Source: Macrostomum lignano (lineage: Eukaryota). From it: a DNA stretch of 64,000 nucleotides. This document shows positions 32,801 to 62,735 of this stretch, piece after piece. The DNA is taken from positions 1-64,000 of the forward strand of contig NIVC01002619.1 of the NCBI GenBank assembly GCA_002269645.1. Reading direction: 5' to 3'. Each line of letters starts with the position of its first letter. The stretch's first letter is position 1. Both the position numbers and the translations under genes were made by a program. The notes beneath the pieces are model-generated. The model had not been told where the DNA came from and ran no database searches. It saw only the letters and a list, made by a program, of their open reading frames with translations.

Positions 32801-33937
32801 CTCTACCGATAGGTTAGTAGACTCTACCGATGGGTTAGTAGAATCCACCGATGGGTTAGTAGACTCTACCGATGGGTTAGTAGACTCTACCGATGCGTTA
32901 GTAGAATCCACCGATGGGTTAGTAGACTCTACCGATGGCTTAGTAAAATCTTTTAATTGGGCTAGCAGAATATACCGCGATAGGGTAGTCACAATATACT
33001 AAATCTTCTAATCTACTAAACTCGTAATATTTGTTTGAATTTAAGAAGTGTTAGTTTACTAGTGTACTAATCTGACATCGAACCCACTACTCGTATCAAA
33101 GTCAACAAAGCAGCCTTGCAATCTGTCGATACAATACTCCAAGCTTATCTATTTCTAAGTAATCGCCATTCTACTCTCGCAGGCTAAAAGCCAGTTCAAG
33201 CGACGCAGCACGGCAAACAATGTGGACATCATCATTCCTGTGCCTGCCGATGTTGACTCGCCAAAGTTTAAGGTTGGCTTTTGGTTTTCTACTTAACAGT
33301 AGTTTGTTAAAGTTTATAAGTATTTAGAAAAGCATTTCGAAATGTCTACAGAATCATTAATATGCTTCTTGTTTTTGATTTATAGATGCAAATCCAAGAA
33401 GCAAATAAAGATAAAGTTGAATACGAAATTAAAGGAAATTAAGGTGTTTTGGATTCCAAATCTAATGAACAAATGAAGGTTAATTAGATGCAAATCTAGG
33501 AAGCAAAAGGTCAAGTTCAATACGAAACTAAGGAACAAATGAAGGTTAATTGAATTCAAGTCTAAGGAAGAAAAATAAAGTCAAGTTGAAAACGAAAAGG
33601 GACAAATGAAGGTCAAGTCGAACATGTGAGACAATGAACAAATGGACGTAATTCAACCATCCCCGCAGACTACGGTGGGCAGCTGCCGCTACCAGCCCGA
33701 GAGCAGCTCTCTGGTGTGGAGCATCAAAGCATTCCCTGGCGGCAAGGAGTTCATTATGAGGGCGCATTTTGGACTGCCTACGGTTGACACCGATGAGAGC
33801 AATGGGAAGCCGCCGATTGCCGTGAAATTCGAGATCCCATATTTTACTGTGTCTGGCATTCAGGTAAGATATTTTTCACTGATGTGTGCTATATGTAAGG
33901 CAGACAGACAGACAGACAGACAGACAAGCAGGCAGAA

Positions 33938-42410: not shown

Positions 42411-42467
42411 TCTCCGGTGTGTTCTCCAAACTTCATGCCACTAATCAATCCAAGCGCATACAACAGC

Positions 42468-45400
42468 ATGCCGCCGAAGCCACCAGCTGCTGAGCTAAAC
42501 TACGACTGCCTTCCCCCGGAATGGTCGGACGACGAGGCAGTCTACCCGCTGTTCCATGCCTTCAAGCGGCCCCGAGCAGTGGATCCGGATAGTTTCGATC
42601 GCAAAATGAAATTCTGGTCTCGCCTATTGCTGGCCTTCTGCAGGCGGAACCGCATTGCCGCTTTGTCCGCAGACGATCTGAGACGATTGTTTCGTAGAAA
42701 GTTTCCAAGCGTCGGTAGAGACTACGAGCCCGAGTGCTTGGGCGCCGTGCTGTATCAGATGCTGCTGGATCAGCGTGGTCGGCATTTCAAATCCACTGAC
42801 GAAAATGACTGGCTGCTGGACCCGGCTGATGAGACGCAGAAGCAGCAGGGACTGGCTGGGAAGTGCGTACTTGATTCCTGATTCCTGATAAGATATACTG
42901 ATGACTCTCCTGACACCCGGATGATTGACTCACCTGACACCTGAGTGACTGACTCTCCTGACACCCGGATGACTGACTCACCTGACGCCCGGATGACTGA
43001 CTCACCTGACACCCGGATGACTGACTCACCTGACACCTGAGTGACTGACTCTCCTGACACTCGGATGACTGACTCACCTGACACCTGAGTGACTGACTCT
43101 CCTGACACCCGGATGACTGACTCACCTGACACCTGAGTGACTGACTCTCCTGACACTCGGATGACTGACTCACCTGACACCTGAGTGACTGACTCTCCTG
43201 ACACCCGGATGACTGACTCACCTGACACCCGGATGACTGACTCTCCTGACACCCGGATGACTGACTCTCCTGACACCCGGATGACTGACTCACCTGACAC
43301 CCGGATGACTGACTCACCTGACACCTGAGTGACTGACTCTCCTGACACCCGGATGACTGACTCACCTGACACCTGAGTGACTGACTCTCCTGACACCTGA
43401 GTGACTGACTCTCCTGACACCCGGATGACTGACTCACCTGACACCTGAGTGACTGACTCTCCTGACACCCGGATGACTGACTCACCTGACACCTGAGTGA
43501 CTGACTCTCCTGACACCTGAGTGACTGACTCACCTGACACCCGGATGACTGACTCACCTGACGCCCGGATGACTGACTCACCTGACACCCGGATGACTGA
43601 CTCACCTGACACCCGGATGACTGACTCACCTGACACCCGGATGACTGACTCACCTGACACTCGGATGACTGACTCACCTGACACCCGGATGACTGACTCA
43701 CCTGACACTCGGATGACTGACTCACCTGACACCCGGATGACTGACTCACCTGACACCCGGATGACTGACTCACCTGACACCTGAGTGACTGACTCAGCTG
43801 ACATCCGGATGACTGACTCACCTGACACCCGGATGACTGACTCACCTGACACCCGGATGACTGACTCACCTGACACCCGGATGACTGACTCGCCTGACAC
43901 CCGGATGACTGACTCACCTGACACTCAGATGACTGACTCACCAGCCCATGACGCCTTACTCATCTACTGACTCACCTGAATCGCCCAACAAACAATCGCA
44001 GGGTGACCGGCGCCGCCTATGATTGGCTGCTCCGTCGACCAATCGCGTACGCCTGGGGCACCTTCGTCTCTGGCTCGACTGCTGCCGAAATGCCAGCCAG
44101 CCTGCCCGACCGTCACGAGCTGGTTCACGCCGGAGTGTTGCGTAGCCTCATCGGGGAGGTGTTGAGCGGGTTGCAACAGGCGCAGGCTGCGGATCACGAC
44201 TCTGCCGGCCACGAGACTGTGAGTGACCTGTCGTATGTGTTTGCTCACATGCCAGCATCCTAATGATTTTAGACACGTTATTACTGACGTATTATGACAT
44301 TCTACTGACATCCTACTGACATATTAGTGACATTCTATTGACATATTAGTGACATTCTACTGACATATTAGTGACATTCTACTGACATATTAGTCACATT
44401 CCACTGACATATTAGTGACATTCTAATTACATTCTACTGACATCCTACTGACATACTAGCAACATTCTTCTGACATTCTATTGACATAATAATGACATTC
44501 TAATGACGTTCTACTCACATCCTAATGACATTAGTCACATTCTACTGACATCCAACTGACAGAATTGACGCGTTACTGACATCCTAATATTATATGTACG
44601 AGCGTATTATAAAAATTATTTTGTTAATTTCTTAAATCCAAACAATTCATTCCAGGACCCAGCATCTCCGCCTCATCGTTTCGCTCCGAGTTTGAACGTG
44701 TGCAGGAAGCGGGATTTCGACCGCTATCTGGAGTCCCTGTGCCCTCATCAGCCTACGAGGCGGCTTCTGGTGCAGCGGTTGATGTCTGACAGGCTGCTGC
44801 ACTCCAGAACTGTGCAGGTGCGGCTGTGCATTTCTTCTTCAAGTGATATTCTTGTTTCTTAACTTTTGTAATAGACATGACTAATACAATAAATAAGCAA
44901 TCCTGCTATAAACCTTGGGCCTCTCAACTTTTTAACTATGGGTTTTATTAAATACCCTGAAGAATTGAAATAAACTGCCCTAAAAAACCTGAACCAACCC
45001 TGAACCAACTCTGAACCAACTTTGAACCAACCCTGAACCAACTCTGAACAAACCCTGAACCAACTCTGAACAAACCCTGAACCAACCCTGAACCAACTCT
45101 GAACCAACTCTGAACCAGCCCTGAACCAACCCTGAACCAACTTTGAACCAACCCTGAACCAACTCTGAACAAACCCTGAACCAACTCTGAACCAACTCTG
45201 AACCAACCCTGAACCAACTCTGAACCAACCCTGAACCAATCCTGAACCAACCCTGAACCAACTCTTAATCAACTCTGAACCAACCCTGAACCAACTCTTA
45301 ACCAACCCTGAACCAACCCTGAAACAGCCCTGAACCAACCCTGAACCAACTCTGAACCAACTCTGAACCAACCCTGAACCAACTTTGAACCAACCCTGAA

Positions 45401-48267
45401 CCAACTCTGAACAAACCCTGAACCAACTCTGAACCAACTCTGAACCAGCCCTGAACCAACCCTGAACCAACTCTGAACCAACCCTGAACCAATCCTGAAC
45501 CAACCCTGAACCAACTCTTAATCAACTCTGAACCAACCCTGAACCAACTCTTAACCAACCCTGAACCAACCCTGAAACAGCCCTGAACCAACCCTGAACC
45601 AACTCTGAACCAACTTTGAACCAACCCTGAACCAACTCTGAACAAACCCTGAACCAACTCTGAACCAACCCTGAACCAACTCTGAACCAACTCTGAACCA
45701 GCCCTGAACCAACCCTGAACCAACTCTGAACCAACCCTGAACCAATCCTGAACCAACCCTGAACCAACTCTGAACCAACTCTGAACCAACCCTGAACCAA
45801 TCCTGAACCAACCCTGAACCAACTCTGAACCAACTCTGAATTAACTCTGAATCAACCGTGAACCAACCATGAACCAACTCTGAATCAACCGTGAACCAAC
45901 CCTAAACCAACCCTGAACCAACCCTGAACTAACCCTGAACCAACCCTGAATCAACTCTGAATCAACCCTGAATCAACTCTGAATCAACCGTGAACCAACA
46001 CTGAGACAACCCTAAATCAACCCTGAACCAACTCTGAACCAACCCTGAATCAACTCTGAATCAACTCTGAATCAACCGTGAACCAACCCTAAACCAACCC
46101 TGAACAAACCCTGAACTAACCCTGAACCAACCCTGAATCAACTCTGAATCAACCCTGAATCAACTCTGAATCAACCGTGAACCAACACTGAGACAACCCT
46201 AAATCAACCCTGAACCAACTCTGAACCAACCCTGAATCAACTCTGAATCAACTCTGAATCAACCGTGAACCAACCCTAAACCAACCCTGAACCAACCCTG
46301 AACTAACCCTGAACCAGCCCTGAACCAACCCTGAACCCACACCCGAAGGTGGGTCGCGCGGGCTCCGAGGAGCTGCTGGTGTGGGCTCGGTCTGCTGACT
46401 GCCCCCTTACAGACGAGTCGGCCATCTCTGCGGACGTGGCCACCGCCAACAGCATTCTGCACCTGGTGCACACCATCAAGACTCTCGAATCCGAGGAGCA
46501 ACAGTTGAAACTGCGAATATCGGCCGGCCGAGACGAGTGCAAACGCCTGCTCAGAGACGGTCGCAAAGACAAAGCTCTTGTTGTTATGCGACGGACCAAA
46601 GCGACTGAGACTCTGCTGGACGAGCGGAAACAGCAGCTGATGAATCTGGACCGGATGCTCATACAGGTTCAGATGGCTAACAGTAATAAGCAGGTGAGTA
46701 GCGGTGGCCTGAGTTTGCCCTCAAACGCCAAAATTTTCCTAACGGCTCAAAATCAGTTTTGATCCTCTAAGAATCACCTCTGACCCCCAAGAATTGCCTC
46801 TGATCCCCATCCCCAATAATACTCTTTGGTCCTCCAAGAATCGCCTCTGATCCCCATCCCCAATAATCACCTTTGATCCTCCAAGAATCGCCTCTGACCC
46901 TCATCCCCAATAATCACCTTTGATCCACCAAGAATCGCCTCTAACCCTCATACCCAATAATCACCTTTGATCCACCAAGAATCGCCTCTGACCCTCATAC
47001 CCAATAATCACCTTTGATCCACCAAGAATCGCCTCTGACCCTCATCCCCAATAATCACCTTTGATCCACCAAGAATCGCCTCTGACCCTCATCCCCAATA
47101 ATCACCTTTGATCCACCAAGAATCGCCTCTGACCCTCATCCCCAATAATCACCTTTGATCCTCCAAGAATCACCTCTGACCCCCAAGAATTGCCTCTGAC
47201 CCCCAAGAATCGCCTCTGATCCCCATCCCCAATAATACTCTTTGGTCCTCCAAGAATCGCCTCTGACCCTCATCCCCAATAATCACCTTTGATCCTCCAA
47301 GAATCGCCTCTGACCCCCATCCCCAATAATCACCTTTGATCCACCAAGAATCGCCTCTGACCCTCATCCCCAATAATCACCTTTGATCCACCAAGAATCG
47401 CCTCTGACCCAATAAAAGAATCGCCTCTAACCCAATAAAAGAATCGTTTCTGACCCAATAAAAGAATCGCCTGTGATCCCAATAAAAGAATCGCCTCTGA
47501 CCCCAATAAAGAATCGCCTCTGATCCCAATAAAAGAATCGCCTCTGACCCCAATAAAGAATCGCCTCTGATCCCAATAAAAGAATCGCCTCTGATCCCAA
47601 TAAAAGAATCGCCTCTGACCCCATAAAAGAATCGCCTCTGACCCTAATAAAAGAATCGCCTCTGACCCAATAAAAGAATCGCCTCTGACCCAATAAAAGA
47701 ATCGCCTCTGACCCAATAAAAGAATCGCCTCTGACCCAATAAAAGAATCGCCTCTGACCCAATAAAAGAATCGCCTCTGACTTCAAAATAAGAATCGCCT
47801 CTGACCCAATAAAAGAATCGCCTCTGACCCCCATGTAAAATTACCCTGCCCCGCAGGTGCTGGACGCATTCAAGGTCACCAGAGACTGGTTCAAAACCTC
47901 GCAAGCAGCCGAGGCCGACTCTCACGAGGCCGCTCACGAAGCTCTGGGCGAAATTCGCGACGTCCTCGACGAGCAGCGCGAATTGGCCGACGCCCTCGCC
48001 TACTCGCCTGGCGCTGAAGGCCTGGACGATAGCGAGCTGGAGTCCGAGCTGGACAAGCTGCTTTTAGAAGAAGCGGAACAGCCAGACTCTGCAGCCGGCA
48101 ATTCTACTAAGCGGAAGAAGCCGGCAGCGGCCGACGCCGAATTGGATGCCAAATTTTCTGAACTCGACGTTGATAGCCTGCAGCTGCCCGACGTGTCCGA
48201 CCTGCCGCTGCCGCACAGCCCCAACGTGTCTCTTGACGAGTTGAAGAAGCGACTGCAGGCGCTTTGA
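42468..48267 (+). CDS. CHMP7: Charged multivesicular body protein 7 (ESCRT-II/III hybrid, winged-helix + Snf7 domain), about 509 aa
   Basis: Exons 42468-42862 (alternative ATG at 42435), 44002-44218, 44656-44817, 46349-46693 and 47857-48267, in phase. N-terminal motif PPEWSDDE...LF.AF..PRAVDPDSFDRKMKFW. Snf7-like helical region (KDKALVVMRRTK...LMNLDRML...KQVLDAFK) and an acidic tail. Confidence 0.9.
42895..43975. repeat. 24-bp minisatellite (GACTGACTCACCTGACACCCGGAT), CHMP7 intron 1
   Basis: About 45 units. It gives the MTDSPDTR and VSGESVIR artefact ORFs. Confidence 0.96.
44275..44585. repeat. Degenerate 22-bp repeat (CTACTGACATATTAGTGACATT), CHMP7 intron 2
   Basis: Tandem units visible at 44310-44420. 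Confidence 0.8.
44990..46340. repeat. 11-bp minisatellite (CTGAACCAACY), CHMP7 intron 3
   Basis: Over 100 units, running to within about 10 nt of the acceptor at 46348. Confidence 0.96.
46760..47832. repeat. 47-bp array converting to a 23-24-bp array (shared core AAGAATCGCCTCTGACCC), CHMP7 intron 4
   Basis: The unit switch occurs near 47400. Confidence 0.92.
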
Positions 48268-49399: not shown

Positions 49400-51250
49400 A
49401 GCCAATTCAATTAGGGGATTCATTAGCCAATTTAATTAGGGGATTCATTAGCCAATTTAATTAGGGGATTCATTAGCCGATTCAATTAGGGGATTCATTA
49501 GCCAATTCAATTAGGAGATTCATTAGCCAATTCAATTAGGAGATTCATTAGCCAATTCAATTAGGAGATTCATTAGCCAATTCAATTAGGAAATTCATTA
49601 GCCAATTTAATTAGGGGATTTATTAGCCAATTTAATTAGGAGATTCATTAGCCAATTCAATTAGGAGATTCATTAGCCAATTCAATTAGGAGATTCATTT
49701 GCCAATTCAATTAGGAGATTCATTAGCCAATTTAATTAGGGGATTTATTAGCCAATTTAATTAGGGGATTCATTAGCCAATTCAATTAGGGGATTCATTA
49801 GCCAATTCAATCAGGTGATTTATTAGCCAATTAAATTAGGGGATTCATTAGCCAATTCAATTAGGTGATTCATTAGCCAATTCAATTAGGGGATTTATTA
49901 GCCAATTAAATTAGGGGATTCATTAGCCAATTCAATTAGGGGATTCATTAGCCAATTCAATTAGGTGATTTATTAGCCAATTCAATTAGGAGATTCATTA
50001 GCCAATTCAATTAGGTGATTTATTAGCCAATTCAATTAGGGGATTCATTAGCGAATTCAATTAGGGGATTTATTAGCCAATTAAATTAGGGGATTCATTA
50101 GCCAATTAAATTAGGGGATTCATTAGCCAATTAAATTAGGGGATTCATTAGCCAATTCAATTAGGGGATTCATTAGCCAATTCAATTAGGAGATTCATTA
50201 GCCAATTCAATTAGGTGATTTATTAGCCAATTCAATTAGGGGATTCATTAGCCAATTCAATTAGGGGATTCATTAGCCAATTCAATTAGTATATTCATTA
50301 GCCAATTAAATTAGGGGATTCATTAGCCAATTCAATTAGTATATTCATTAGCCAATTCAATTAGTATATTCATTAGCCAATTCAATTAGTATATTCATTA
50401 GCCAATTCAATTAGGATATTCATTAGCCAATTCAATTAGTATATTCATTAGCCAATTCAATTAGGATATTCATTAGCCAATTCAATTAGGGGATTCATTA
50501 GCCAATTCAATTAGGGGATTCATTAGCCAATTCAAATGGGGGTTCATTAGCCAATTCAATTAGGGGATTCATTAGCCAATTCAATTAGGGGATTCATTAG
50601 CCAATTCAATTAGTATATTCATTAGCCAATTCAATTAGGGGATTCATTAGCCAATTCAATTAGTATATTCATTAGCCAATTCAATTAGTATATTCATTAG
50701 CCAATTCAATTAGTATATTCATTAGCCAATTCAATTAGTATATTCATTAGCCAATTCAATTAGTATATTCATTAGCCAATTCAATTAGTATATTCATTAG
50801 CCAATTCAATTAGGGGATTCATTAGCCAATTCAATTAGGATATTCATTAGCCAATTCAATTAGGATATTCATTAGCCAATTTAATTAGTATATTCATTAG
50901 CCAATTCAATTAGTATATTCATTAGCCAATTCAATTAGGATATTCATTAGCCAATTCAATTAGGATATTCATTAGCCAATTCAATTAGTATATTCATTAG
51001 CCAATTCAATTAGGGGATTCATTAGCCAATTCAATTAGGATATTCATTAGCCAATTCAATTAGTATATTCATTAGCCAATTCAATTAGGGGATTCATTAG
51101 CCAATTCAATTAGGATATTCATTAGCCAATTCAATTAGGGGATTCATTAGCCAATTCAATTAGGATATTCATTAGCCAATTCAATTAGTATATTCATTAG
51201 CCAATTCAATTAGGGGATTCATTAGCCAATTCAATTAGGATATTCATTAG
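49400..51250. repeat. 25-bp AT-rich minisatellite (CATTAGCCAATTCAATTAGGGGATT)
   Basis: Period of 25 (49501 and 49526), about 73 units. TAGTATATT/GGATATT variants are restricted to the right half. Confidence 0.96.
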
Positions 51251-52139
51251 TCACTCTACATGTAAATATGAAGTTAGGCACAAGCGACCATTCTTTGGTG
51301 GGGTTATGCGATTCAGATATAATCAGGAATATCCTTGTGTTCGCCATTGTGTGTCTAAAATAACGGCAAGAGACATATTGCTGGTCTATTTTAACGGCTC
51401 GTATTCACTTGAAAGTTACGAAAAGGACGTTGGTTGGTTCAAAACTTACCTGAATCTACGTATTCTAGGAATTATAATTAAAGCCAGAATGAAGCTGTGT
51501 CAGCTGCAGAACCTAAAATTCTAGTTCCGGCTGTTACAACAACGCAACCAACAACGCGCAATGACTTGTTCTCCATGTCATGTCAATGGCGATGAGTATT
51601 GCACATTGATGCTTACCAGCAACGGAAGTATAGGGTTGGATCCTGGTGAAGCTATACTATTTTTGTCAAATATTGTTACGGATAATATTCTCATATCATT
51701 TGGACCTACTCCCGTGCGAACCTCCTTCCTTCAACATTCTTGTTTCAGTGAGTTCTCAGCCGATCTATGGTGAGATTGAAAATATTCTAGTTTCACCTCC
51801 ACCACAACCTCACCTCCACCTAAACCACAACCTCGACCACAACCTCAGCCTCAACCACCAACTGCACAACCACATTGGCAAGCATATCCAAAGCGTAACG
51901 TCTGTAAAGGTTTCTGCAACTGCTTCAAAAGCAGAAATTGCGCCTGGTCTTTGGTTGCATTTCTTCTTCATTTGCTGTTGGCCTGTTGTCTGACATTGAC
52001 CGTAGTGCTTTTTGGCCCGCTGCGGCTGTTAAAGGATAATGGACTGGTGAGCTGACACTGAAAATGGTAAAAGAAAGGTATTTTAGGCGAAAGAAAATAT
52101 ATTTTCAGCTAAAAATTCTGCAAATTCTAGATAATAAAT

Positions 52140-53150
52140 TCTGAGATTCTTGGCAGAAAATTCTGTAGATTCTGGGCAGAAAATTCGGCAGCTTCTAGGC
52201 AGAAAATTTGGCAGCTTCTGGGCAGAAAATTCTGTAGATTCTGGGCAGAAAATTTGGCAGATTCTATGCAGAAAATTCGGCAGATTCTGGGCAGAAAATT
52301 TGGCAGCTTCTGGGCAGAAAATTCGGCAGATTCTGGGCAGAAGTACTGCAGATTCTGGGCAGAAAATTTGGCAGATTCTGGGCAGAAAATTTGGCAGATT
52401 CTATGCAGAAAATTCGGCAGATTCTGGGCAGAAAATTTGGCAGATTCTGGGCAGAAGTACTGCAGATTCTGGGCAGAAAATTTGGCAGATTCTGGGCAGA
52501 AAATTCGGCAGCTTCTAGGCAGAAAATTTGGCAGCTTCTGGGCAGAAGTACTGCAGATTCTGGGCAGAAAATTCGGCAGATTCTGGGCAGAAAATTCGGC
52601 AGATTCTGGGCAGAAAATTCGGCAGATTCTGGGCAGAAAATTCGGCAGCTTCTGGGCAGAAAATTTGTCAGATTCTGGGCAGAAAATTCTGTAGATTCTG
52701 GGCAGAAGTACTGCAGATTCTGGGCAGAAAATTTGGCAGATTCTGGGCAGAAGTACTGCAGATTCTGGGCAGAAAATTTGGCAGATTCTGGGCAGAAGTA
52801 CTGCAGATTCTGGGCAGAAAATTTGGCAGATTCTGGGCAGAAAATTCGGCAGCTTCTGGGCAGAAAATTTGGCAGATTCTGGGCAGAAAATTTGGCAGAT
52901 TCTGGGCAGAAAATTCGGCAGATTCTGGGCAGAAAATTCGGCAGATTCTGGGCAGAAAATTCGGCAGATTCTGGGCAGAAAATTCGGCAGATTCTGGGCA
53001 GAAAATTCGGCAGATTCTGGGCAGAAAATCGGCAGCTTCTGGGCAGAAAATTCTGTAGATTCTGGGCAGAAAATTTGGCAGATTCTGGGCAGAAAATTCG
53101 GCAGATTCTGGGCAGAAGTACTGCAGATTCTGGAAAGAAAATTCGGCAGA
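52140..53150. repeat. 23-bp minisatellite (CAGATTCTGGGCAGAAAATTCGG) in intron 2 of the pseudogene copy
   Basis: The same family occupies 56890-57170 in the intact paralog. Confidence 0.95.
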
Positions 53151-53862
53151 TTCTTGGTATAAAATTTAAGTAGTTTCAAAGCAGAAACTTCGGCAGATTC
53201 ATTGCAATGAGGGGGATAGACTTGGGATTGAGAATTGAAAATTCAGGAAAGAGAGGAAGAAAGATTCATGGGGGAGGGGCAAAAATGAAGGTAATTATGG
53301 ACAGACATAGCAGACCAACGCTAATTATGTGCTGTTCCTGATTCATCAGCTAATTACCTACGTGCCTACGTGTATTCAGTAACTATAGAAAACTCCTCCC
53401 ACACCAACATGGCACAGGTACGAGTATCACAAGAGTGGATCAACTTGTCGTCGAAATTCGAGTCTACAACCCCATGGTTCGTGACTGTAAGTTCATTTGC
53501 TAGACAAATGAAATGCTTACATGTACTCGAAATTAACGTCTATATTAGGATATTTTCTTGGCCTGAAGCCGAACTTCCATATTTTCTGGCGTACATTTAT
53601 TTATAGCCAGCTAGTTATTTTTGCGAGATGTTTTTTTTTGAAAGACGATTCTACGAGCGTAATTGTTGTAAACATGAAACCGTGGCTCTCTGCCTGCGTA
53701 CGCGATGTGGTTCCTAATTATTAATCTAGAATATACACATGCACATAAATCTATATTTAGTCATTTGTTTCATACTGTTTATAACACACTTACTTAATTA
53801 AAGTGCGAAGGTAGAGAGTGGAAGTAGAGGAAATTGAGGTAGAGGGCGGGGTAGAGGGGCGG

Positions 53863-55289: not shown

Positions 55290-55533
55290 CTGGTTACGGT
55301 CGAGGCGCTGCAGCTCCGCTGTGTGGCCTCCCGGGTCACAGGCGTCATGAACCGCGTGCTCGTCGGCGCTCCTGCGCCCACCACCGAGTGGACCGTCGCG
55401 CACATCGTGCCGATCCCGAAGAAGGCATTGACAACGCGGAAAGAAGACCACCGCGGGATCTCGCTGATGTCCTGCACCCCGAAGCTCTTCAACCGGCTTC
55501 TGCTCGATCGTCTGCAGTCGGTGCTGGACCGGA
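55290..55533 (+). mobile_element. Non-LTR retrotransposon (LINE, RTE/CR1-like) reverse-transcriptase N-terminal fragment
   Basis: EWTVAHIVPIPKKALTTRKEDHRGISLMSCTPKLFNRLLLDRLQSVLD matches the W..A.I.PIPKK...YRGISL.S...KL motif preceding RT domain 1. Confidence 0.85.
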
Positions 55534-55621
55534 GATAGAGGGGTTAAAAGTGTAAGGGCCGAGGTAGACATAATGAAGGTATAAAACCGAGAAGTCTAAT
55601 TGCACTCTGTAAAACATGAAG

Positions 55622-55805
55622 CGTGGCACACACCCTCAATTACCCCAGCTAATGCTGGCACCCATTTTACAGCTGGGTGAACTGAAGCAATGCAAGAGTT
55701 AAGTGTCTTGCTCAAGAATACAAGTTGTTCTAGTGCGATCGGAAATCGAACCCCCAACCATCAAGTCGTGAGTCCGATGCTCTCACCACTAGGCTACAAA
55801 CCCTC
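55622..55805 (-). mobile_element. tRNA-derived CORE-SINE
   Basis: The minus strand has A-box TAGCCTAGTGG and B-box GGTTCGATTTCC, then the CORE-like CTTGAGCAAGACACTTAACTC...CAGTTCACCCAGCTGTAAAATGGG. A second copy lies at 3722-3838. Confidence 0.8.
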
Positions 55806-56124
55806 ACTCAAAATGAGATCACGCAAGTGTAACTAATGATTTTATATTATCATACTCGAAATTCTATTAATTCTTTTTGAAATTGAAACCACCTGGTGCC
55901 TAAAATAGCGGCTAGAAAGCCTATTTTTATTCCATTTTTATCTGTAGAAGTTTAAGAAAAGAATGTCACTCTGGAAAGTTACTTGGATAAGCTACCTGAG
56001 CCAATTAAATTTATTTATTCTATGAAATATAACTGGAGCCAGAATTAACTGCGCTTACAAAGCTAATGCTAAGCTGCCGGACTAATAGGAACACCTGGAC
56101 TCTACTTCTGCTGTTTCACTCGCA

Positions 56125-58665
56125 ATGGCTTGTTCTCAATGTCGTGTCAGTAGCGGTCATGCTTATTGCACATTGGTGCCTACAATTGACGGCATTATGA
56201 TGGTGGATCCTGGTATGAAACCAGTTATTATTGCATAAAACTATATTCTCATACCGTTACGAACTACATGTAGATAACTCCCGTCCGAACCTCTTTCAAC
56301 TCTCCCGCTACAGAGACTTCGGAGCCGCAATATGTAGAGATTGAAAAAATTACTCCAGCTTCACCTCCGCCGCGACCGCCGAGACACGGAAAAACGTCAC
56401 CTCCGCAACCTCCACCACAACCTCCACCTAAACCTAGACCACAACCTCCACCTAAACCTATACCACAACCTCCACCTAAACCTAAACCACAACCTCCACC
56501 TAAGCCACAACCTCGACCACAACCTCGACCACAACCTCAACCACAACCTCAACCACAACCTCGACCACAACCTCAACCACAACCTCGACCACAACCTCAA
56601 CCACAACCTCGACCACAACCTCAACCACAACCTCGACCACAACTTCCACCACCTACTGCACAACCACATTGGCAAGCATATCCAAAGCGTAACGTCTGTA
56701 AAGGTTTCTGCAACTGCTTCAAAAGCAGAAATTGCGCCTGGTCTTTGGTTGCATTTTTTCTTCATTTGCTGTTGGCCTGTTGTCTGACATTGACCGTAGT
56801 GCTTTTTGGCCCGCTGCGGCTGTTAAAGGATGATGGACTGGTGAGCTGACACTGAAAATGGTAAAAGAATGGGATTTTAGGCGAAAGAAATGAGATTCTG
56901 AGCTGAAAATTCTGCAGATTCTAGATAATAAATTCTGAGATTCGGGGCAGAAAATTCTGTAGATTCTTGGCAGAAAGTTCTGTAGATTCTTGGCAGAAAA
57001 TTCTGTAGATTCTGGGCAGAAAACTCTGTAGATTCTTGGCAGAAAGTTCTGTAGATTCTGGGCAGAAAATTCTGTAGATTCTGGGCAGAAAATTCTGTTA
57101 GACTCAAGGCAGAAAATTCTGTAGATTCTGGGCAGAAAATTCTGTAGCTTCTAGGCAGAAAATTCTGCAAAATTTACTACGATTTAGTCTACGGCAGATT
57201 CATAGTAATGAAGGGATAGATTCGTCATGGAAAATTGAAAAATTCAGGGAAGAATGAAAGGAATATTTAGTGGACGAAAATTAGGATAATTATATAGACA
57301 GACGAAGTTAACTAAAGCTAATCATGTGTTGTTCCTGATTCATTAGTTAGCTAACTATTCAGTAGAAAACTCCCCCACACCAACACGGCGCAGGTACGAG
57401 TATCACAAGAGTGGATCAACTTGTCGTCGAATTTCGAGTCTCCAAGCCTCACGGGTCTTGGCTGTAAGTCCATTTGCCGGGCATATGAATTGCTTACTCA
57501 GCAATTACGTCTATAGTATACAATTATTTTCTTGGCCTGAACTTCCATATTTTCTGGCGTACATTTAGCCAGCAAATTGTTTAACAAAACTGGTCTTTCG
57601 TCAACCGTCAATGTTTGACATAAACACATGAAGCCGCTACTTTGCCAGCGTGCGCGATGTGGTTTTTAACTGTTAGTCTGAATTATACCCGTGCACAAAA
57701 ATTATATTTAGTCATTCAATTCACTGTTTATAGCACACTTACTTGAAGTGCGAAGGTAGAGGAGTGAAGATAGAGGGTGAAGGTAGATGTAGAAGGCGGG
57801 GTAGAGGACAGAGGTATAGAGGGGCGAAGATAGAGAGGGTGTAGTTAGAAGGGCGGAAGTAAAGGGCGGAGGTAGAGAGCGGAGATGGAGGGGGCGGAGA
57901 TAGTGGGGGTGGATGTTGAGGTAGAGGCCGGAGGTAGATGGGGCGGAGATAGTGGGGGTGTAGTTAGAAGGGTGAAGGTAGAGGGCGGAGGTAGAGTGTG
58001 GACTTACGAGCGTAGAGGGGCGGAGGTAGATATAATGAAGGTATAAAATATGAGATGCCCAATTGCACTTTGCAAAACACGAAGCCCGACAGCCGGGAAC
58101 TACAAGCAACTTTTTCAACTGAAGCCAAACTATTTCAGTACAAACTCGCTGCTAAGCCAAACAAAGATTGATTGCTCACCTGCCAATGCCCCAACTTCAG
58201 CCGTGAACTTCGCCGCAATCGACCCGTCTATTAAGATGGTCAAGATTGAAGAGGACGAAAACGGCCAAAGAAGCAAAATACTCATCAAACAGGGTGGTCT
58301 GTTCCGCATCAATTTCAATGTGAGTAGAAGCTCAACCTCACTGAAAGTAGCAGATCTTATTTGATTCTTATCTGATTTATATTTAGTCATTAATTAAAAA
58401 GACCTTATATTTCCAGGTAAATTTTGATTGCAAGAACGGCGTAACTACTGTTCAATCGAGAGTTCAATATTCGACGCCGAAGCATCAGGAGTCCCAAAAA
58501 CTGCACGAGTGCATGCGAAAATGGATTGGTCAGTCAAGCCGCGATTTAATTGTGTGCAGTTTCAGCATAGTTCGTCCACTAACGGTCAATAGTTGGCTGC
58601 AGTTGCAGTTTTCTAGATATAACTGCAAAAATAACTTTACTGTAAGCTTGGAGAGAATGGTTTAA
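56125..58665 (+). CDS. Type II membrane protein, 398 aa: Cys/His N-terminal motif, Pro/Gln-rich cytoplasmic tail, TM helix, C-terminal TNF/C1q-like domain (putative TNF-superfamily ligand)
   Basis: Exons 56125-56212, 56314-56840, 57366-57463, 58085-58319 and 58417-58665 total 1197 nt, all GT-AG, phases 1/0/2/0, no internal stop. TM segment is WSLVAFFLHLLLACCLTLTVVLF, with no signal peptide. ILIKQGGLFRINFNVNF aligns by eye with the TNF-family strand motif (FasL LVINETGLYFVYSKVYF). The gene model is well supported; the family assignment is inference. Confidence 0.75.
56890..57170. repeat. 23-bp minisatellite (same family as 52140-53150) in intron 2 of the TNF-like gene
   Basis: GATTCTGGGCAGAAAATTCTGTA units. 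Confidence 0.9.
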
Positions 58666-58776: not shown

Positions 58777-59065
58777 TTAAATTCTAAAGACTTCCTCAGC
58801 CCCGTCTTGCCCCACCCCTCCACTAGAGCGTCTCCTTCCTACCCCCACCGTACATTCATTTAATAGCTGCGTACAAACCCGCCCCTCCTTTTAAAGCGCC
58901 CACCCCAATTTTCTCGTCCTCTCGTCTTTATACCACTTCAAATTCTAAAGATTTTCTCACCCCTGCTTGCTCACCTCCTCACTAGAGCGTCGCCTTCCTA
59001 CCCCTCACTGTACATTCATCCAATGGCTGTGTACAAATCCACCCTCCCCTTAAAGCCCCCCACTA
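58777..59065. repeat. Diverged direct duplication, about 130-160-bp unit
   Basis: AAATTCTAAAGA...ACTAGAGCGTC.CCTTCCTACCCC...GTACATTCAT occurs twice. Confidence 0.7.
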
Positions 59066-59324: not shown

Positions 59325-60420
59325 CCCAAGACTGCAAGCATCCCCCAGATAGCAAGCATCCCCAGATAGCAAGCATCCCCAGATAGCAAGCATCCCCCAG
59401 ATTGCAAGCATCCCCCAGATAGCAAGCATCCCCCAGATAGCAAGCATCCCCCAGATAGCAAGCATCCACCCAGATAGCAAGCATCCCCCAGATAGCAAGC
59501 ATCCCCCAGATAGCAAGCATCCCCCAGATAGCAAGCATCCCCCAGATAGCAAGCATCCCCCAGATAGCAAGCATCCCCAAGATAGCAAGCATCCCCCAGA
59601 TAGCAAGCATCCCCCAGATAGCAAGCATCCCCCAGATAGCAAGCATCCCCCAGATAGCAAGCATCCCCAAGATAGCAAGCATCCCCCAGATTGCAAGCAT
59701 CCCCAAGATAGCAAGCATCCCCCAGATAGCAAGCATCCCCCAGATAGCAAGCATCCCCAGATAGCAAGCATCCCCCAGATAGCAAGCATCCCCCAGATAG
59801 CAAGCATCCCCAGATAGCAAGCATCCCCCAGATAGCAAGCATCCCCCAGATAGCAAGCATCCCCAAGATAGCAAGCATCCCCCAGATAGCAAGCATCCCC
59901 AAGATAGCAAGCATCCCCAAGATAGCAAGCATCCCCAAGATAGCAAGCATCCCCCAGATAGCAAGCATCCCCAAGATAGCAAGCATCCCCCAGATTGCAA
60001 GCACCCCCAGATAGCAAGCATTCCTCAGATAGCAAGCATCCCCCAGATAGCAAGCATCCCCAGATAGCAAGCATCCCCAAGATAGCAAGCATCCCCCAGA
60101 TAGCAAGCATCCCCCAGATAGCAAGCATCCCCCAGATAGCAAGCATCCCAAGATAGCAAGCATCCCCAAGATAGCAAGCATCCCCAAGATAGCAAGCATC
60201 CCCCAGATTGCAAGCATCCCCCAGATTGCAAGCATCCCCCAGATAGCAAGCATCCCCAAGATAGCAAGCATCCCTCAGATAGCAAGCATCCCCCAGATAG
60301 CAAGCATCCCCAGATAGCAAGCATCCCCCAGATAGCAAGCATCCCCCAGATAGCAAGCATCCCCAAGATAGCAAGCATCCCCAAGATAGATAGCATCCCC
60401 AAATAGCAAGCATCCACCAG
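59325..60420. repeat. 18-19-bp minisatellite (CAGATAGCAAGCATCCCC[C])
   Basis: About 58 units. It is the source of the GCLLS, MLAIWG and DACYLG ORFs. Confidence 0.96.
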
Positions 60421-60564
60421 ACAATAAGTAGCTAGTGCGACAATTTCCTTAGCATTATAGCGGCTCCTTTAAAATTCGCTTACTTTTACGTTTGAAATTG
60501 TGTATCTTTTATGTTTAACAGGGTGGCTCTTTTATGTTCTACGCTCGTACATGGTAACTCTTTT

Positions 60565-62735
60565 ATGTTTGATACGGTGGCTTTTCAATGTCTGACATAG
60601 TGGCTCTTCTATGTTTGACATGGGGGCTCTTCTATGTTTGACATGGGGGCTCTTCTATGTTTGACATGGGGGCTCTTCTATGTTTGACATGGGGGCTCTT
60701 CTATGTTTGACAAAGTGGCTTTTTAATGTTTGACATGGTGGCTCTATTATGTTTGACATGGTGGCTCTTTAATGTTCGAAATGGTGGCTCTTTAATGTTC
60801 AAAAAGGTGGCTCTTTTATGTTTGACATGGTGGCTCTTTAATGTTTGACATGGTGGCTCTTTAATGTTTGACATGGTGGCTCTTTAATGTTAGACAAAGT
60901 AGCTCTTTAATGTTTGACATGATGGCTCTTCAATGATAGACATGGTGGCTCTTTAATTTTTGACATGGTGGCTCTTTAATGTTGGACATGGTGGCTCTTT
61001 AATGTTAGACATGGTGGCTCTTTAATGTTCGACATAAAGTCACTTATATGTTTGACATGATGGCTCTTTTATGTTTAACATGGTGGCTCTTTAATGTTTG
61101 ACATGGTAGCTCTTTAAAGTTCGACATGGTGGCTCTTTAATGTTCGACATGGTGGCTCTTTACTGTTCGACATGGTGGCTCTTTTATGTTAGACATGGTG
61201 TTGCTTCAATGTTTGACATGGAGTTACGTATATGTTTTACATGGTGGCTCTTTTATGTTCGACGTGGTGGCTCTTTAATGTTTGACATGGGGTCTCTTCA
61301 ATGTTTGACATGGAGTTACGTATATGTTTGACATGGTGGCTCTTTAATGTTTTACATGGTGGCACTTTCATGTTTGACCTGGTGGCTCTTAAATGTTTGA
61401 CATGGTGGCTCTTGATTGTTCGACATAGAGTCATGTATATGTTTGCCATGGTGGCTCTTTAATGTTAGACCTGGTGGCTCTTTTATGTTTTGCATGGTGG
61501 CTCTTTTATGTTCGACATGGTGTCTCTTCAATGTTTGACATGGAGTCATGTATATGTTTGACATGGTGGCTCTTGTATTTTTAACACGTTGGCTCTTTAA
61601 TGTTCGACATGGTGGCTCTTTAATGTCTAACATGGAGTCACGTATATGTTTGACATGGAGTCATGTATATGTCTGATATGGTAGCTCTTTAATGTTTTAC
61701 ATGGAGTTACCTATATGTTTCACATGGTGGCTATTTTATGTTTGACATCATGGTGGTTCTTAAATGTTCGACATGGTGGCTCTTTAATGTTTTACATGGT
61801 GGCTCTTTAATATTTGACATGGTGGCCCTTTTATGTTCTACACGGTGGCTCTTTAATGTTTGACATGGAGTCATGTATATGTTTGACCTGGTGGCTCTTT
61901 AATGTTTGACATGGTGGCTCTTTAATGTTTTATATGGTGGCACTTTTATGTTTGACCTGGTGGCTCTTTAATGTTTGACATGGTGGCTTTTTAATATTTG
62001 ACATGGTGGCACTTTCATGTTTGACCTGGTGGGTCTTTAATGTTTGACATGGTACCTCTTTTATGTTCGACATGGTGGCTCTTTAATGTTTTACATGGTG
62101 GCTCTTTAATGTTTGACATGGTGACTCTTTTATGTTCTACATGGTGGCTCTTTTATGTTCGACATGGTGGCTCTTTAATGTTTGATAAGGTGGCTCTTTA
62201 ATGTTTAAAATGGTGGCTCTTTAATTTTCGAAATGGTGGCTGTTTTATGTTTGACATGGTGGCTCTTTAATGTTCGACATGGTGGCTCTTTAATGTTCTT
62301 AATGGTGTCTGTTTTATGTTTGACATGGCGGCTCTTTAATGTTTGACATGGTAACTCTTTTAGGTTTGAAATGGTGTCTCTTTAATGTTTGACATGGTGG
62401 CTTTTTAATGTTTGACATGGTGGCTTTTTATTGTTCGACATGGTGGCTCTTTTAGGTTTGAAATGGTGGCTCTTTAATGTTTGACATTGTGGCTCTTTAA
62501 TGTTCGACATGGTGGCTCTTTAATGTTTGACATGGTAACTCTTTTATGTTTGATATGGTGGCTCTTTTATGTTCGACATGGTGGCTCTTTAATGTTCGAC
62601 ATGGTGGCTCTTTTAGGTTTGAAATGGTGGCTCTTTAATGTTTGACATTGTGGCTCTTTAATGTTTGAAATGGTGGCTCTTTAATGTTTGACATTGTGGC
62701 TCTTTAATGTTTGAAATGGTGGCTCTTTAATGTTT
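60565..62735. repeat. 23-bp degenerate minisatellite (TTTGACATGGTGGCTCTTTAATG)
   Basis: About 90 units. Confidence 0.95.

What the first reader, a model, noticed from the sequence alone, without database searches (positions are those of the whole stretch)
56125..58665. Hidden 5-exon gene with Fas-ligand-like architecture: Pro-rich cytoplasmic tail, type II TM helix and divergent TNF/C1q-like domain
Seen: five exons join in phase into a 398-aa ORF, although the ORF track shows only the wrong frame (NLDHNL) or fragments. The layout is MACSQCRVSSGHAYC..., TSEPQYVEIEK, roughly 100 aa of PPQPPPKPRPQ repeats, Cys-rich CKGFCNCFKSRNC, a TM helix, a stalk, then ILIKQGGLFRINFNVNF...KLHECMRK...CSFSIVRPLTVNSWLQLQF...NNFTVSLERMV*. 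Established: TNF ligands are type II proteins with a C-terminal jelly-roll, and vertebrate FasL is distinguished by a proline-rich cytoplasmic domain that binds SH3/WW proteins and supports reverse signalling. Inference: this is a highly divergent invertebrate TNF-superfamily (or C1q-fold) ligand with a convergent or ancestral FasL-like tail, probably unannotated.
Basis: partly seen in the sequence, partly recalled or inferred. Interest (0 to 1): 0.85.

Follow-up and report, generated by a model that had tools for sequence, protein, structure and literature searches.

The report
Probable divergent TNF-like ligand gene
The five exons do join into an intact 398-residue membrane protein whose outer end looks weakly but consistently like a tumour-necrosis-factor-type signalling domain, and whose inner proline-rich tail comes from a recently expanded DNA repeat, not from an ancient Fas-ligand feature.

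Summary
Exons 56125-56212, 56314-56840, 57366-57463, 58085-58319 and 58417-58665 (+) all have GT/AG borders and join in phase into a 398-aa ORF. It has no signal peptide and one strong TM helix (aa 171-197) with the more positive flank on the N side, so type II topology is predicted.

The tail is 53% proline over 103 aa. The C-terminal ~125 aa are all-beta.

TNF evidence is consistent but weak:
- Pfam finds neither TNF nor C1q.
- An exhaustive phmmer search of 1.84 billion proteins finds no real homologue.
- A TNF profile built from 16 human domains scores 13.6 bits; 0 of 20,000 shuffles reach it.
- That profile picks exon 5 as the best of 528 open segments in the window.
- The score needs exons 4 and 5 joined in order (14.2 bits against 2.6 and 4.5).
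- A C1q profile gives noise.
- Two low-confidence AlphaFold models both find TNF ligands as the nearest PDB structures (E 1e-3 to 1e-2).

The proline tail is a 12-nt coding minisatellite. A decayed partial paralogue 4.5 kb upstream has only a short version, so the FasL-like look is convergent and recent.

No expression evidence is available. Best reading: a new, very divergent TNF-superfamily-like ligand (confidence about 0.5).

The parts
56014..56047 (+). Conserved A/T-rich island (TATTCTATGAAATATAACTGGAGCCAGAAT) 78-111 nt upstream of the ATG. Possible core promoter.
   Evidence: It is the only well-aligned patch in the otherwise unalignable upstream 200 nt between the two copies; its partner is at 51460-51492. 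The promoter role is inferred.
56125..56212 (+). Exon 1: ATG and aa 1-29 (MACSQCRVSSGHAYC...), with three Cys conserved in the paralogue. Donor GTATGA.
   Evidence: It is 75% identical to paralogue exon 1', against 44-45% in the flanks. The predicted frame is the best of six by codon score.
56314..56840 (+). Exon 2: the rest of the cytoplasmic tail, the proline-rich region, the Cys-rich juxtamembrane segment and the TM helix. Donor GTGAGC.
56331..56342 (+). YVEI (aa 36-39), a Tyr-x-x-hydrophobic motif. It reads YGEI in the paralogue.
   Evidence: A sorting or SH2-docking role is inferred only.
56406..56652 (+). Coding minisatellite: 12-nt unit CAACCTCGACCA, 21 copies. It encodes the (QPRP/QPQP/PPKP)n proline-rich domain within aa 45-147.
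   Evidence: TRF gives period 12, 21.1 copies and 79% matches. The region is 53% Pro and has 10 SH3 class I/II consensus motifs.
56697..56816 (+). Cys-rich juxtamembrane segment CKGFCNCFKSRNC followed by the TM helix AWSLVAFFLHLLLACCLTLTVVLFGPL (aa 171-197, nt 56736-56816).
   Evidence: Hydropathy 2.57; the N flank is more positive than the C flank. The stretch is 99% identical to the paralogue, and the identity runs about 50 nt into the intron, which indicates gene conversion.
56893..57167 (+). 23-nt minisatellite inside intron 2. The same family is expanded to about 1 kb in the paralogue's intron.
57366..57463 (+). Exon 3: extracellular stalk (KTPPHQHGAGTSITRVDQLVVEFRVSKPHGSW). Donor GTAAGT.
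   Evidence: It is 86% identical to exon 3', against 63-67% in the flanking introns.
58085..58319 (+). Exon 4: the rest of the stalk and the first strands of the TNF-like domain, ending ...KILIKQGGLFRINFN. Donor GTGAGT.
   Evidence: Its open segment ranks third of 528 for the TNF profile.
58417..58665 (+). Exon 5: the remainder of the TNF-like domain (VNFDCKNG...NNFTVSLERMV) and the TAA stop.
   Evidence: Its open segment is the best TNF-profile score of 528 in the window (10.0 bits). Exons 4+5 joined score 14.2 bits, against 2.6 and 4.5 alone and 4.6 when swapped.
58161..58662 (+). Candidate TNF-homology-like beta-sandwich domain (aa 264-398), interrupted by intron 4 (58320-58416).
   Evidence: AlphaFold models show 8 strands. 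Foldseek top hits are TNF ligands.
51561..53486 (+). Decayed partial tandem paralogue (copy A): exon 1' 51561-51645, exon 2' 51749-52046 (short Pro repeat), exon 3' 53389-53486. It has no exon 4/5 equivalents.
   Evidence: tblastn and blastn. A frameshift in the repeat puts the TM helix out of frame with stops, and a further 1-nt indel lies in exon 3'.
55556..55622 (+). Copy A counterpart of the last 68 nt of intron 3, up to the exon-4 acceptor. Homology stops there and a tRNA-like SINE-type sequence follows.
   Evidence: 84% identity to 58018-58085; sequence.

Best explanation
This is a real five-exon gene for a type II membrane protein that works as a very divergent TNF-superfamily-type ligand.

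Proposed layout and mechanism:
- The N-terminal 170 aa face the cytoplasm. They carry a small Cys motif, a YVEI motif and a roughly 100-aa proline-rich tract full of SH3-type docking sites.
- A Cys-rich juxtamembrane segment, probably acylated, precedes a single TM helix.
- A roughly 90-aa stalk presents a compact C-terminal beta jelly-roll of about 125 aa. By analogy with TNF ligands this domain would trimerise and bind a cysteine-rich TNFR-type receptor on another cell.
- The stalk has no furin site, so the protein would act membrane-bound or after metalloprotease shedding.
- The proline-rich tail would recruit SH3/WW proteins for sorting or reverse signalling, as in FasL.
- The tail arose here by in-frame expansion of a 12-nt minisatellite, so it is convergent with FasL, not inherited from a common ancestor.

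Shown by the tools: the ORF, the splice signals, the TM helix and charge bias, the repeat origin of the tail, the decay of the paralogue, and the weak TNF profile and fold matches.

Inferred: expression, trimerisation, receptor binding, acylation and SH3 docking.
For: Gene model:
- The 398-aa spliced ORF is intact and has canonical GT/AG borders.
- Exon-shaped conservation islands appear against a diverged paralogue.
- That paralogue has accumulated frameshifts, while this copy has none.
- The predicted frame has the best codon score for exons 1, 4 and 5.

Topology: one strong TM helix, a more positive N flank and no signal peptide.

TNF likeness:
- A profile of 16 human TNF domains was checked to retrieve only TNF ligands from the PDB.
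- That profile scores 13.6 bits with a nominal single-test P of 2.6e-6. None of 20,000 shuffles reaches it (maximum 11.1).
- hhalign scores 23.2, against shuffles of 10.8 +/- 1.9 with a maximum of 19.2.
- The alignment puts KILIKQGGLFRINFNVNF on the family signature QLVVPSEGLYLIYSQVLF and is colinear through strands B to G.
- The profile ranks the exon 5 segment first and the exon 4 segment third of 528 open segments.
- The score needs the two exons spliced in order.
- Foldseek on two separate AlphaFold models gives TNF ligands as nearly all top hits: EDA-A2 at E 1.2e-3, then 4-1BBL, TNF, BAFF, LIGHT, CD40L, TRAIL and GITRL.
- The domain ends at the C-terminus right after the last strand, as TNF ligands do.

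Tail: it is a 12-nt tandem repeat of 21 copies and is short in the paralogue.

Background: a proline-rich domain that docks SH3/WW proteins is unique to FasL among known TNF ligands (PMC2647539).
Against: - Pfam TNF (PF00229) is not detected even at E up to 10. The best Pfam hit is a sub-threshold Cohesin match of similar strength (15 bits, E 0.02), which shows the sequence signal is near family-wide noise.
- hhalign probability is only 10.8%.
- The strict TNF signature pattern does not match, and the A and H strands do not align.
- No homologue was found among 1.84 billion representative proteins.
- The AlphaFold models are single-sequence and low-confidence (pLDDT 44 and 58). TM-scores are 0.4-0.55, and the second model puts a helix where the first has a strand.
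- There is no expression evidence.
- The acceptors of introns 2 and 3 are weak, and no canonical poly(A) signal lies within 1 kb.
- Codon scores are well below those of the housekeeping genes in the window.
Confidence: 0.5

Rival explanations
1. This is a real, lineage-specific type II membrane protein whose small beta-sandwich ectodomain is not homologous to TNF. It could be an orphan adhesion or adaptor-type protein, with the cytoplasmic proline-rich and YVEI tail as its main functional part. The TNF resemblance would then be generic jelly-roll similarity.
For: No curated family is detected. No homologue was found in 1.84 billion proteins. A Cohesin match, another jelly-roll family, is as strong as the TNF signal. 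Model confidence is low and TM-scores are around 0.45.
Against: The Foldseek top 50 are almost exclusively TNF ligands in two models, not a mixture of beta-sandwiches. The TNF profile beats all 20,000 shuffles and needs the spliced exon order. Type II topology with the domain at the extreme C-terminus is the TNF-ligand layout.
Confidence: 0.22
2. This is not a functional gene. It would be a chance chain of open segments and GT/AG sites in repeat-rich DNA, or a recently dead pseudogene like its upstream copy.
For: The repeat exon is open in several frames. Two acceptors are weak and there is no poly(A) signal. Codon scores are only marginally coding-like. The neighbouring copy is clearly decayed. 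There are no transcripts or homologues to support it.
Against: All five segments are intact and in phase over 398 codons, while the paralogue has frameshifts. Exon-limited conservation exists between the copies. The protein architecture is coherent. The TNF-profile signal is concentrated in exons 4 and 5 and increases on splicing.
Confidence: 0.23
3. The C-terminal domain is a C1q-type globular head, not a TNF domain.
For: C1q and TNF share the same jelly-roll fold. A few cerebellin-1 chains appear among the Foldseek hits of the second model.
Against: A C1q profile, verified against the PDB, gives hhalign score 10.4 and P 0.5, which is the level of shuffled sequences. No Pfam C1q hit was found. 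C1q proteins are secreted with a signal peptide and usually a collagen stalk, not type II membrane proteins (established knowledge).
Confidence: 0.04

Closest known systems
Fas ligand (TNFSF6)
   Same: Both are type II membrane proteins with a long cytoplasmic tail. Both have N-terminal Tyr residues, an extended proline-rich domain carrying class I and II SH3 motifs, a stalk and a C-terminal beta jelly-roll that ends at the C-terminus (FasL features from PMC2647539).
   Different: There is no detectable sequence relationship to FasL in particular. The tail here is about 170 aa, against 80 aa in FasL. Its proline region is a (QPRP/QPQP/PPKP)n coding minisatellite, not a polyproline run. That region is short in the paralogue, so it is recent and convergent. 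No casein-kinase motif was examined.
EDA / Eiger-type and other conventional TNF ligands (TNF, TRAIL, CD40L, BAFF, LIGHT)
   Same: These are the best Foldseek matches: EDA-A2 at E 1.2e-3, plus TNF, BAFF, LIGHT, CD40L and TRAIL. The profile alignment is colinear from strand B to strand G, including the G-[LF]-[YF] core of strand C.
   Different: The domain is shorter (about 125 aa against about 150). The conserved Trp and the C-terminal FFG-type motif are absent. It falls below the Pfam threshold.
Divergent compact TNF ligands (4-1BBL, GITRL, OX40L)
   Same: Both are compact or atypical TNF-homology domains with very low sequence identity to the rest of the family. 4-1BBL and GITRL are top Foldseek hits of the second model.
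   Different: Those are vertebrate immune co-stimulators with short cytoplasmic tails. No specific relationship is shown.
C1q globular domain family
   Same: It has the same jelly-roll fold class. A few cerebellin hits appear.
   Different: The C1q profile comparison is at noise level. Topology and domain context also differ.

Membership tests
TNF ligand superfamily (TNFSF) | Type II membrane topology: no signal peptide, a single TM helix, and the N-terminus in the cytoplasm | tested here: met
   There is one hydrophobic segment at aa 171-197 (KD 2.57). Flank net charge is +3 on the N side and +1 on the C side. The N-terminus is not hydrophobic. This is a prediction only; no dedicated topology predictor was available.
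TNF ligand superfamily (TNFSF) | C-terminal TNF homology domain recognised by the curated model (Pfam PF00229) at its gathering score | tested here: not met
   No TNF hit was found at E up to 10 for the whole protein, the ectodomain or the last 135 aa.
TNF ligand superfamily (TNFSF) | TNF family signature in strand C (PROSITE-type pattern, written from memory) | tested here: not met
   There is no strict match. ILIKQGGLFRINFNVNF fits 6 of the 10 specified positions. The same pattern hits only 9 of the 16 human domains used.
TNF ligand superfamily (TNFSF) | Significant profile similarity to TNF homology domains | tested here: inconclusive
   A custom 16-sequence profile scores 13.6 bits and none of 20,000 shuffles reaches it. 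hhalign scores 23.2 (P 0.003, probability 10.8%), against a shuffle maximum of 19.2. This is significant as a single directed test, but it sits at the noise level of a whole-library search.
TNF ligand superfamily (TNFSF) | Ten-strand beta jelly-roll fold superposable on solved TNF ligands | tested here: inconclusive
   Two single-sequence AlphaFold models (pLDDT 44 and 58) each show 8 strands. The Foldseek top hits are almost all TNF ligands, with E from 1.2e-3 to 6e-2 and TM from 0.4 to 0.55.
TNF ligand superfamily (TNFSF) | Homotrimer formation | not testable with these tools
   Only monomer prediction was available.
TNF ligand superfamily (TNFSF) | Binding to a cysteine-rich-domain TNFR-type receptor | not testable with these tools
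   This needs the species' receptor repertoire and binding assays.
Fas ligand orthology group | Cytoplasmic proline-rich domain with SH3/WW docking motifs | tested here: met
   The region is 53% Pro over 103 aa, with 5 class I and 5 class II SH3 consensus motifs and no PPxY. This is a shared feature, not evidence of orthology.
Fas ligand orthology group | Common descent of the tail and domain with FasL | tested here: not met
   The tail is a 12-nt tandem array and is only about 60 nt long in the older paralogue. FasL is not among the listed Foldseek hits, which are led by EDA and 4-1BBL.
C1q domain family | Profile similarity to gC1q (PF00386 or an equivalent profile) | tested here: not met
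   There is no Pfam hit. hhalign against a verified C1q profile scores 10.4 with P 0.5.

The most novel reading that the evidence does not exclude
An animal lineage has independently built a FasL-style reverse-signalling TNF ligand. Its SH3-docking cytoplasmic tail is a fast-evolving, probably length-polymorphic coding minisatellite attached to a TNF homology domain so divergent that curated models miss it. This would be a hidden class of TNF ligands in this lineage.
Probability: 0.2. Interest if true: 0.6.

Novelty: new member of a known kind. Interest (0 to 1): 0.4.

Why it matters
If the gene is expressed and the domain is a true TNF fold, standard annotation misses very divergent TNF ligands outside vertebrates. 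A proline-rich docking tail is considered unique to FasL among TNF ligands (PMC2647539). This case would show that such a tail can arise again by simple repeat expansion inside a coding exon. That would give a natural test of what a proline-rich tail does for a TNF ligand, such as sorting or reverse signalling. If the gene is not expressed, it is just one more decaying duplicate in a repeat-rich region.

Tried and rejected
Homology searches with no useful result:
- A word-indexed search with the 251-aa TM-plus-ectodomain found nothing.
- Exhaustive phmmer gave one hit, P0001. It is a 2244-aa bacterial RHS/Ig-repeat protein that matches the stalk through five weak repeated stretches, so I judged it spurious.
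- PDB sequence search found nothing.
- A JGI metagenome scan gave no relative.

Attempts to calibrate the database and identify the organism:
- A CHMP7-like query returned nothing.
- An AP-1 mu query returned many eukaryotic fragments with at most 70% identity over the full query length (one partial hit, 87% over 58% of the query).
- All listed hits were no longer than about 1.75 times the query length. The null is therefore probably a property of the tool, and I do not treat it as informative.
- The organism stays unidentified.
The look-up of the AP-1 mu first-exon ORF was not on record.

Negative feature scans:
- Rfam found no family in the window.
- ARAGORN found no tRNA in the SINE-like stretch.
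- No inverted repeats flank exons 4-5.
- Pfam did not recognise the short retrotransposon-like peptide.

Rejected or discounted readings:
- The Cohesin Pfam match (15 bits, below its 24.1 cut-off) is treated as noise.
- The C1q reading is rejected.
- I considered copy A exons 1'-3' as alternative 5' exons spliced to exon 4. I rejected this because copy A is frameshifted and its phase does not match.
- Literature searches found no described non-vertebrate TNF ligand with a proline-rich tail, but the searches were shallow.
Full report
**1. Observation**

The region is eukaryotic-looking DNA. Joining 56125-56212, 56314-56840, 57366-57463, 58085-58319 and 58417-58665 on the + strand gives 1197 nt, that is 398 codons and a TAA stop.

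- Every intron starts with GT and ends with AG.
- Three donors are close to consensus (GTGAGC, GTAAGT, GTGAGT).
- The acceptors of introns 1 and 4 have pyrimidine tracts. Those of introns 2 and 3 are weak.
- The ATG has A at -3 and G at +4, and in-frame stops lie 13-14 codons upstream.

**2. Is the gene model more than chance?**

Exon 2 alone is poor evidence. Its centre is a 12-nt tandem repeat (56406-56652, 21 copies) that is open in several frames and on both strands.

The best internal evidence comes from a partial tandem paralogue about 4.5 kb upstream (copy A), with exon 1' at 51561-51645, exon 2' at 51749-52046 and exon 3' at 53389-53486.

| Segment | Identity between copies |
|---|---|
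| Upstream 200 nt | 44% |
| Exon 1 | 75% |
| Intron 1 | 45% |
| Start of exon 2 | 70% |
| End of intron 2 | 63% |
| Exon 3 | 86% (91% over its first 75 nt) |
| Intron 3 | 67% |

The predicted exons are therefore islands of conservation. The TM-coding end of exon 2 is 99% identical, and the identity continues about 50 nt into the intron, so that tract reflects recent gene conversion and not selection.

Copy A is dead:
- A frameshift in its short proline repeat throws the TM helix out of frame into stops.
- Exon 3' has a further 1-nt indel.
- Homology resumes only for the last 68 nt of intron 3 (55556-55622). It stops at the exon-4 acceptor, where a tRNA-like SINE-type sequence begins.
- There are no exon 4/5 equivalents.

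The finding's copy has kept all 398 codons intact while its sister decayed, which argues that it is maintained.

A crude codon-usage score was trained on 953 codons from the AP-1 mu, Snf7/CHMP7-like and TTC39 genes in the window. It ranks the predicted frame best of six for exons 1, 4 and 5. The absolute scores are only at about the 93rd to 96th percentile of non-coding windows and well below those housekeeping exons.

On the negative side, there is no AATAAA or ATTAAA within 1 kb of the stop, and no expression data could be consulted.

**3. Protein anatomy**

- There is no N-terminal signal sequence.
- One strong hydrophobic helix spans aa 171-197 (AWSLVAFFLHLLLACCLTLTVVLFGPL).
- The N flank (CKGFCNCFKSRNC) is more positive than the C flank, which predicts the N-terminus inside the cell (type II).
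- The cytoplasmic 170 aa hold three Cys (C3, C6, C15) conserved in copy A. They also hold a YVEI motif (YGEI in copy A).
- A 103-aa stretch is 53% Pro, with five class I and five class II SH3 consensus motifs and no PPxY.
- The ectodomain has a roughly 90-aa stalk without a furin site, one N-glycosylation sequon and a C-terminal all-beta region.

**4. What is the C-terminal domain?**

Curated and broad searches are negative:
- Pfam shows neither TNF nor C1q. It shows only a sub-threshold Cohesin match.
- PDB sequence search is empty.
- Exhaustive phmmer over 1.84 billion representatives gives only a spurious repeat-driven hit to a bacterial RHS protein.

Directed tests favour TNF.

- hhalign against the last 135 aa scores 23.2 (P 0.0029, probability 10.8%). 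It places KILIKQGGLFRINFNVNF on QLVVPSEGLYLIYSQVLF and continues colinearly to strand G.
- 300 shuffles of the query give 10.8 +/- 1.9 with a maximum of 19.2.
- An HMM from the same alignment scores 13.6 bits (single-test E 2.6e-6).
- None of 20,000 shuffles reaches that score; the maximum is 11.1.
- Across all 528 stop-to-stop segments of at least 40 aa in the six frames of the window, the exon 5 segment ranks first (10.0 bits) and the exon 4 segment third.
- Exons 4 and 5 score 2.6 and 4.5 bits alone, 14.2 bits when spliced as predicted and 4.6 bits in swapped order. The signature is split by intron 4 and rebuilt by splicing, which independently supports junction 58319/58417.
- A C1q profile, verified, gives score 10.4 and P 0.5, which is noise.

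Structure prediction:
- Single-sequence AlphaFold models of the 193-aa ectodomain (pLDDT 44) and of the last 135 aa (pLDDT 58, pTM 0.52) both give an eight-strand beta sandwich ending at the C-terminus.
These are EDA-A2 at E 1.2e-3, then EDA-A1, 4-1BBL, TNF, BAFF, LIGHT, CD40L, TRAIL and GITRL, with TM 0.4-0.55.
- The second model returns mainly 4-1BBL, EDA, CD40L and GITRL, plus a few cerebellin and ExsFA chains.

Both lines of evidence are weak and not fully independent, but they converge.

**5. The 'FasL-like' tail**

According to PMC2647539, FasL is the only TNF ligand with an extended proline-rich domain. That domain docks SH3/WW proteins and controls sorting and reverse signalling. The resemblance in layout is real.

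However, the tract here is a 12-nt minisatellite with 79% unit identity. It sits in a window that carries more than a dozen unrelated minisatellites, and the diverged paralogue has only about 60 nt of it. It is therefore a recent in-frame expansion. It is convergent with FasL at most, not ancestral.

**6. Mechanism proposed**

- The protein is a membrane-anchored ligand whose C-terminal jelly-roll trimerises and engages a TNFR-type receptor.
- It is either retained on the cell surface or shed by a metalloprotease.
- The juxtamembrane cysteines are probably acylated.
- The proline-rich and YVEI tail recruits SH3/SH2/adaptor proteins for trafficking or reverse signalling.
- Only the sequence features are shown. 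Trimerisation, receptor binding, acylation and docking are inferences from the named families.

**7. Verdict**

- Observation: confirmed.
- Interpretation: partly supported. TNF-like is favoured over C1q, curated membership fails, and the tail is convergent.
- Probabilities: about 0.5 for an expressed divergent TNF-type ligand, about 0.22 for a real but unrelated type II protein, about 0.23 for a non-functional ORF or pseudogene, and about 0.04 for C1q.
- Novelty: a new and very divergent member of a known kind.
- Interest: moderate (0.4). It would rise if transcripts and a confident trimeric fold are obtained.

Noticed in passing
window 51561-53486 and 55556-55622: There is a partial tandem duplicate of the gene's promoter-proximal part (exons 1-3 and most of intron 3). 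It has frameshifts and no exons 4-5. A 99%-identical gene-conversion tract covers the TM-coding end of exon 2 and the first ~50 nt of intron 2.
   Followed up: yes
window 55623-55810: This sequence follows the truncated copy A. On its minus strand it carries tRNA-like box A and box B motifs (GTAGCCTAGTGGT...GGTTCGATTTCC), which looks like a tRNA-derived SINE. ARAGORN and Rfam do not call it, and it occurs once in the window.
   Followed up: partly
window 55293-55538 (+): A short open frame reads ...TEWTVAHIVPIPKKALTTRKEDHRGISLMSCTPKLFNRLLLDRLQSVLDRR*. It resembles the start of a non-LTR retrotransposon reverse transcriptase and lies inside intron 3 of copy A. Pfam gave no hit for this 82-aa piece.
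   Followed up: partly
window 50000-51250, 52136-53200, 56893-57167, 59334-60421, 60549-62735, and elsewhere (about 6.4-8.1, 9.7-11.3, 35-37.3, 42.8-43.9, 44.9-45.8 and 47.3-47.8 kb): The density of minisatellites with 18-25-nt units is unusually high, and many arrays are about 1-2 kb long. They produce long spurious ORFs in several frames. The 23-nt family in intron 2 is shared by both gene copies.
   Followed up: partly
window 29874-30269 and 33642-33872 (+): An AP-1/AP-2 mu-type adaptor subunit gene lies here. Its first exon matches AP-1 mu proteins across eukaryotes at up to 70% identity. A later exon hits Pfam Adap_comp_sub.
   Followed up: partly
window 42417-48267 (+): This is a multi-exon gene with an Snf7 domain (Pfam PF03357). 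I take it to be CHMP7-like from memory. Its introns are filled with minisatellites.
   Followed up: partly
window 11299-16022 (-): A TTC39-family gene lies here. It hits Pfam Iml2-TPR_39 at E 6e-32.
   Followed up: partly
window 57752-57996 (+) and 58790-59060 (+): Intron 3 contains degenerate G-rich GGTAGAGGGCGGAG-type repeats. C-rich sequence that looks like their complement lies just downstream of the stop codon. The repeat finder reported no inverted repeat pair.
   Followed up: partly
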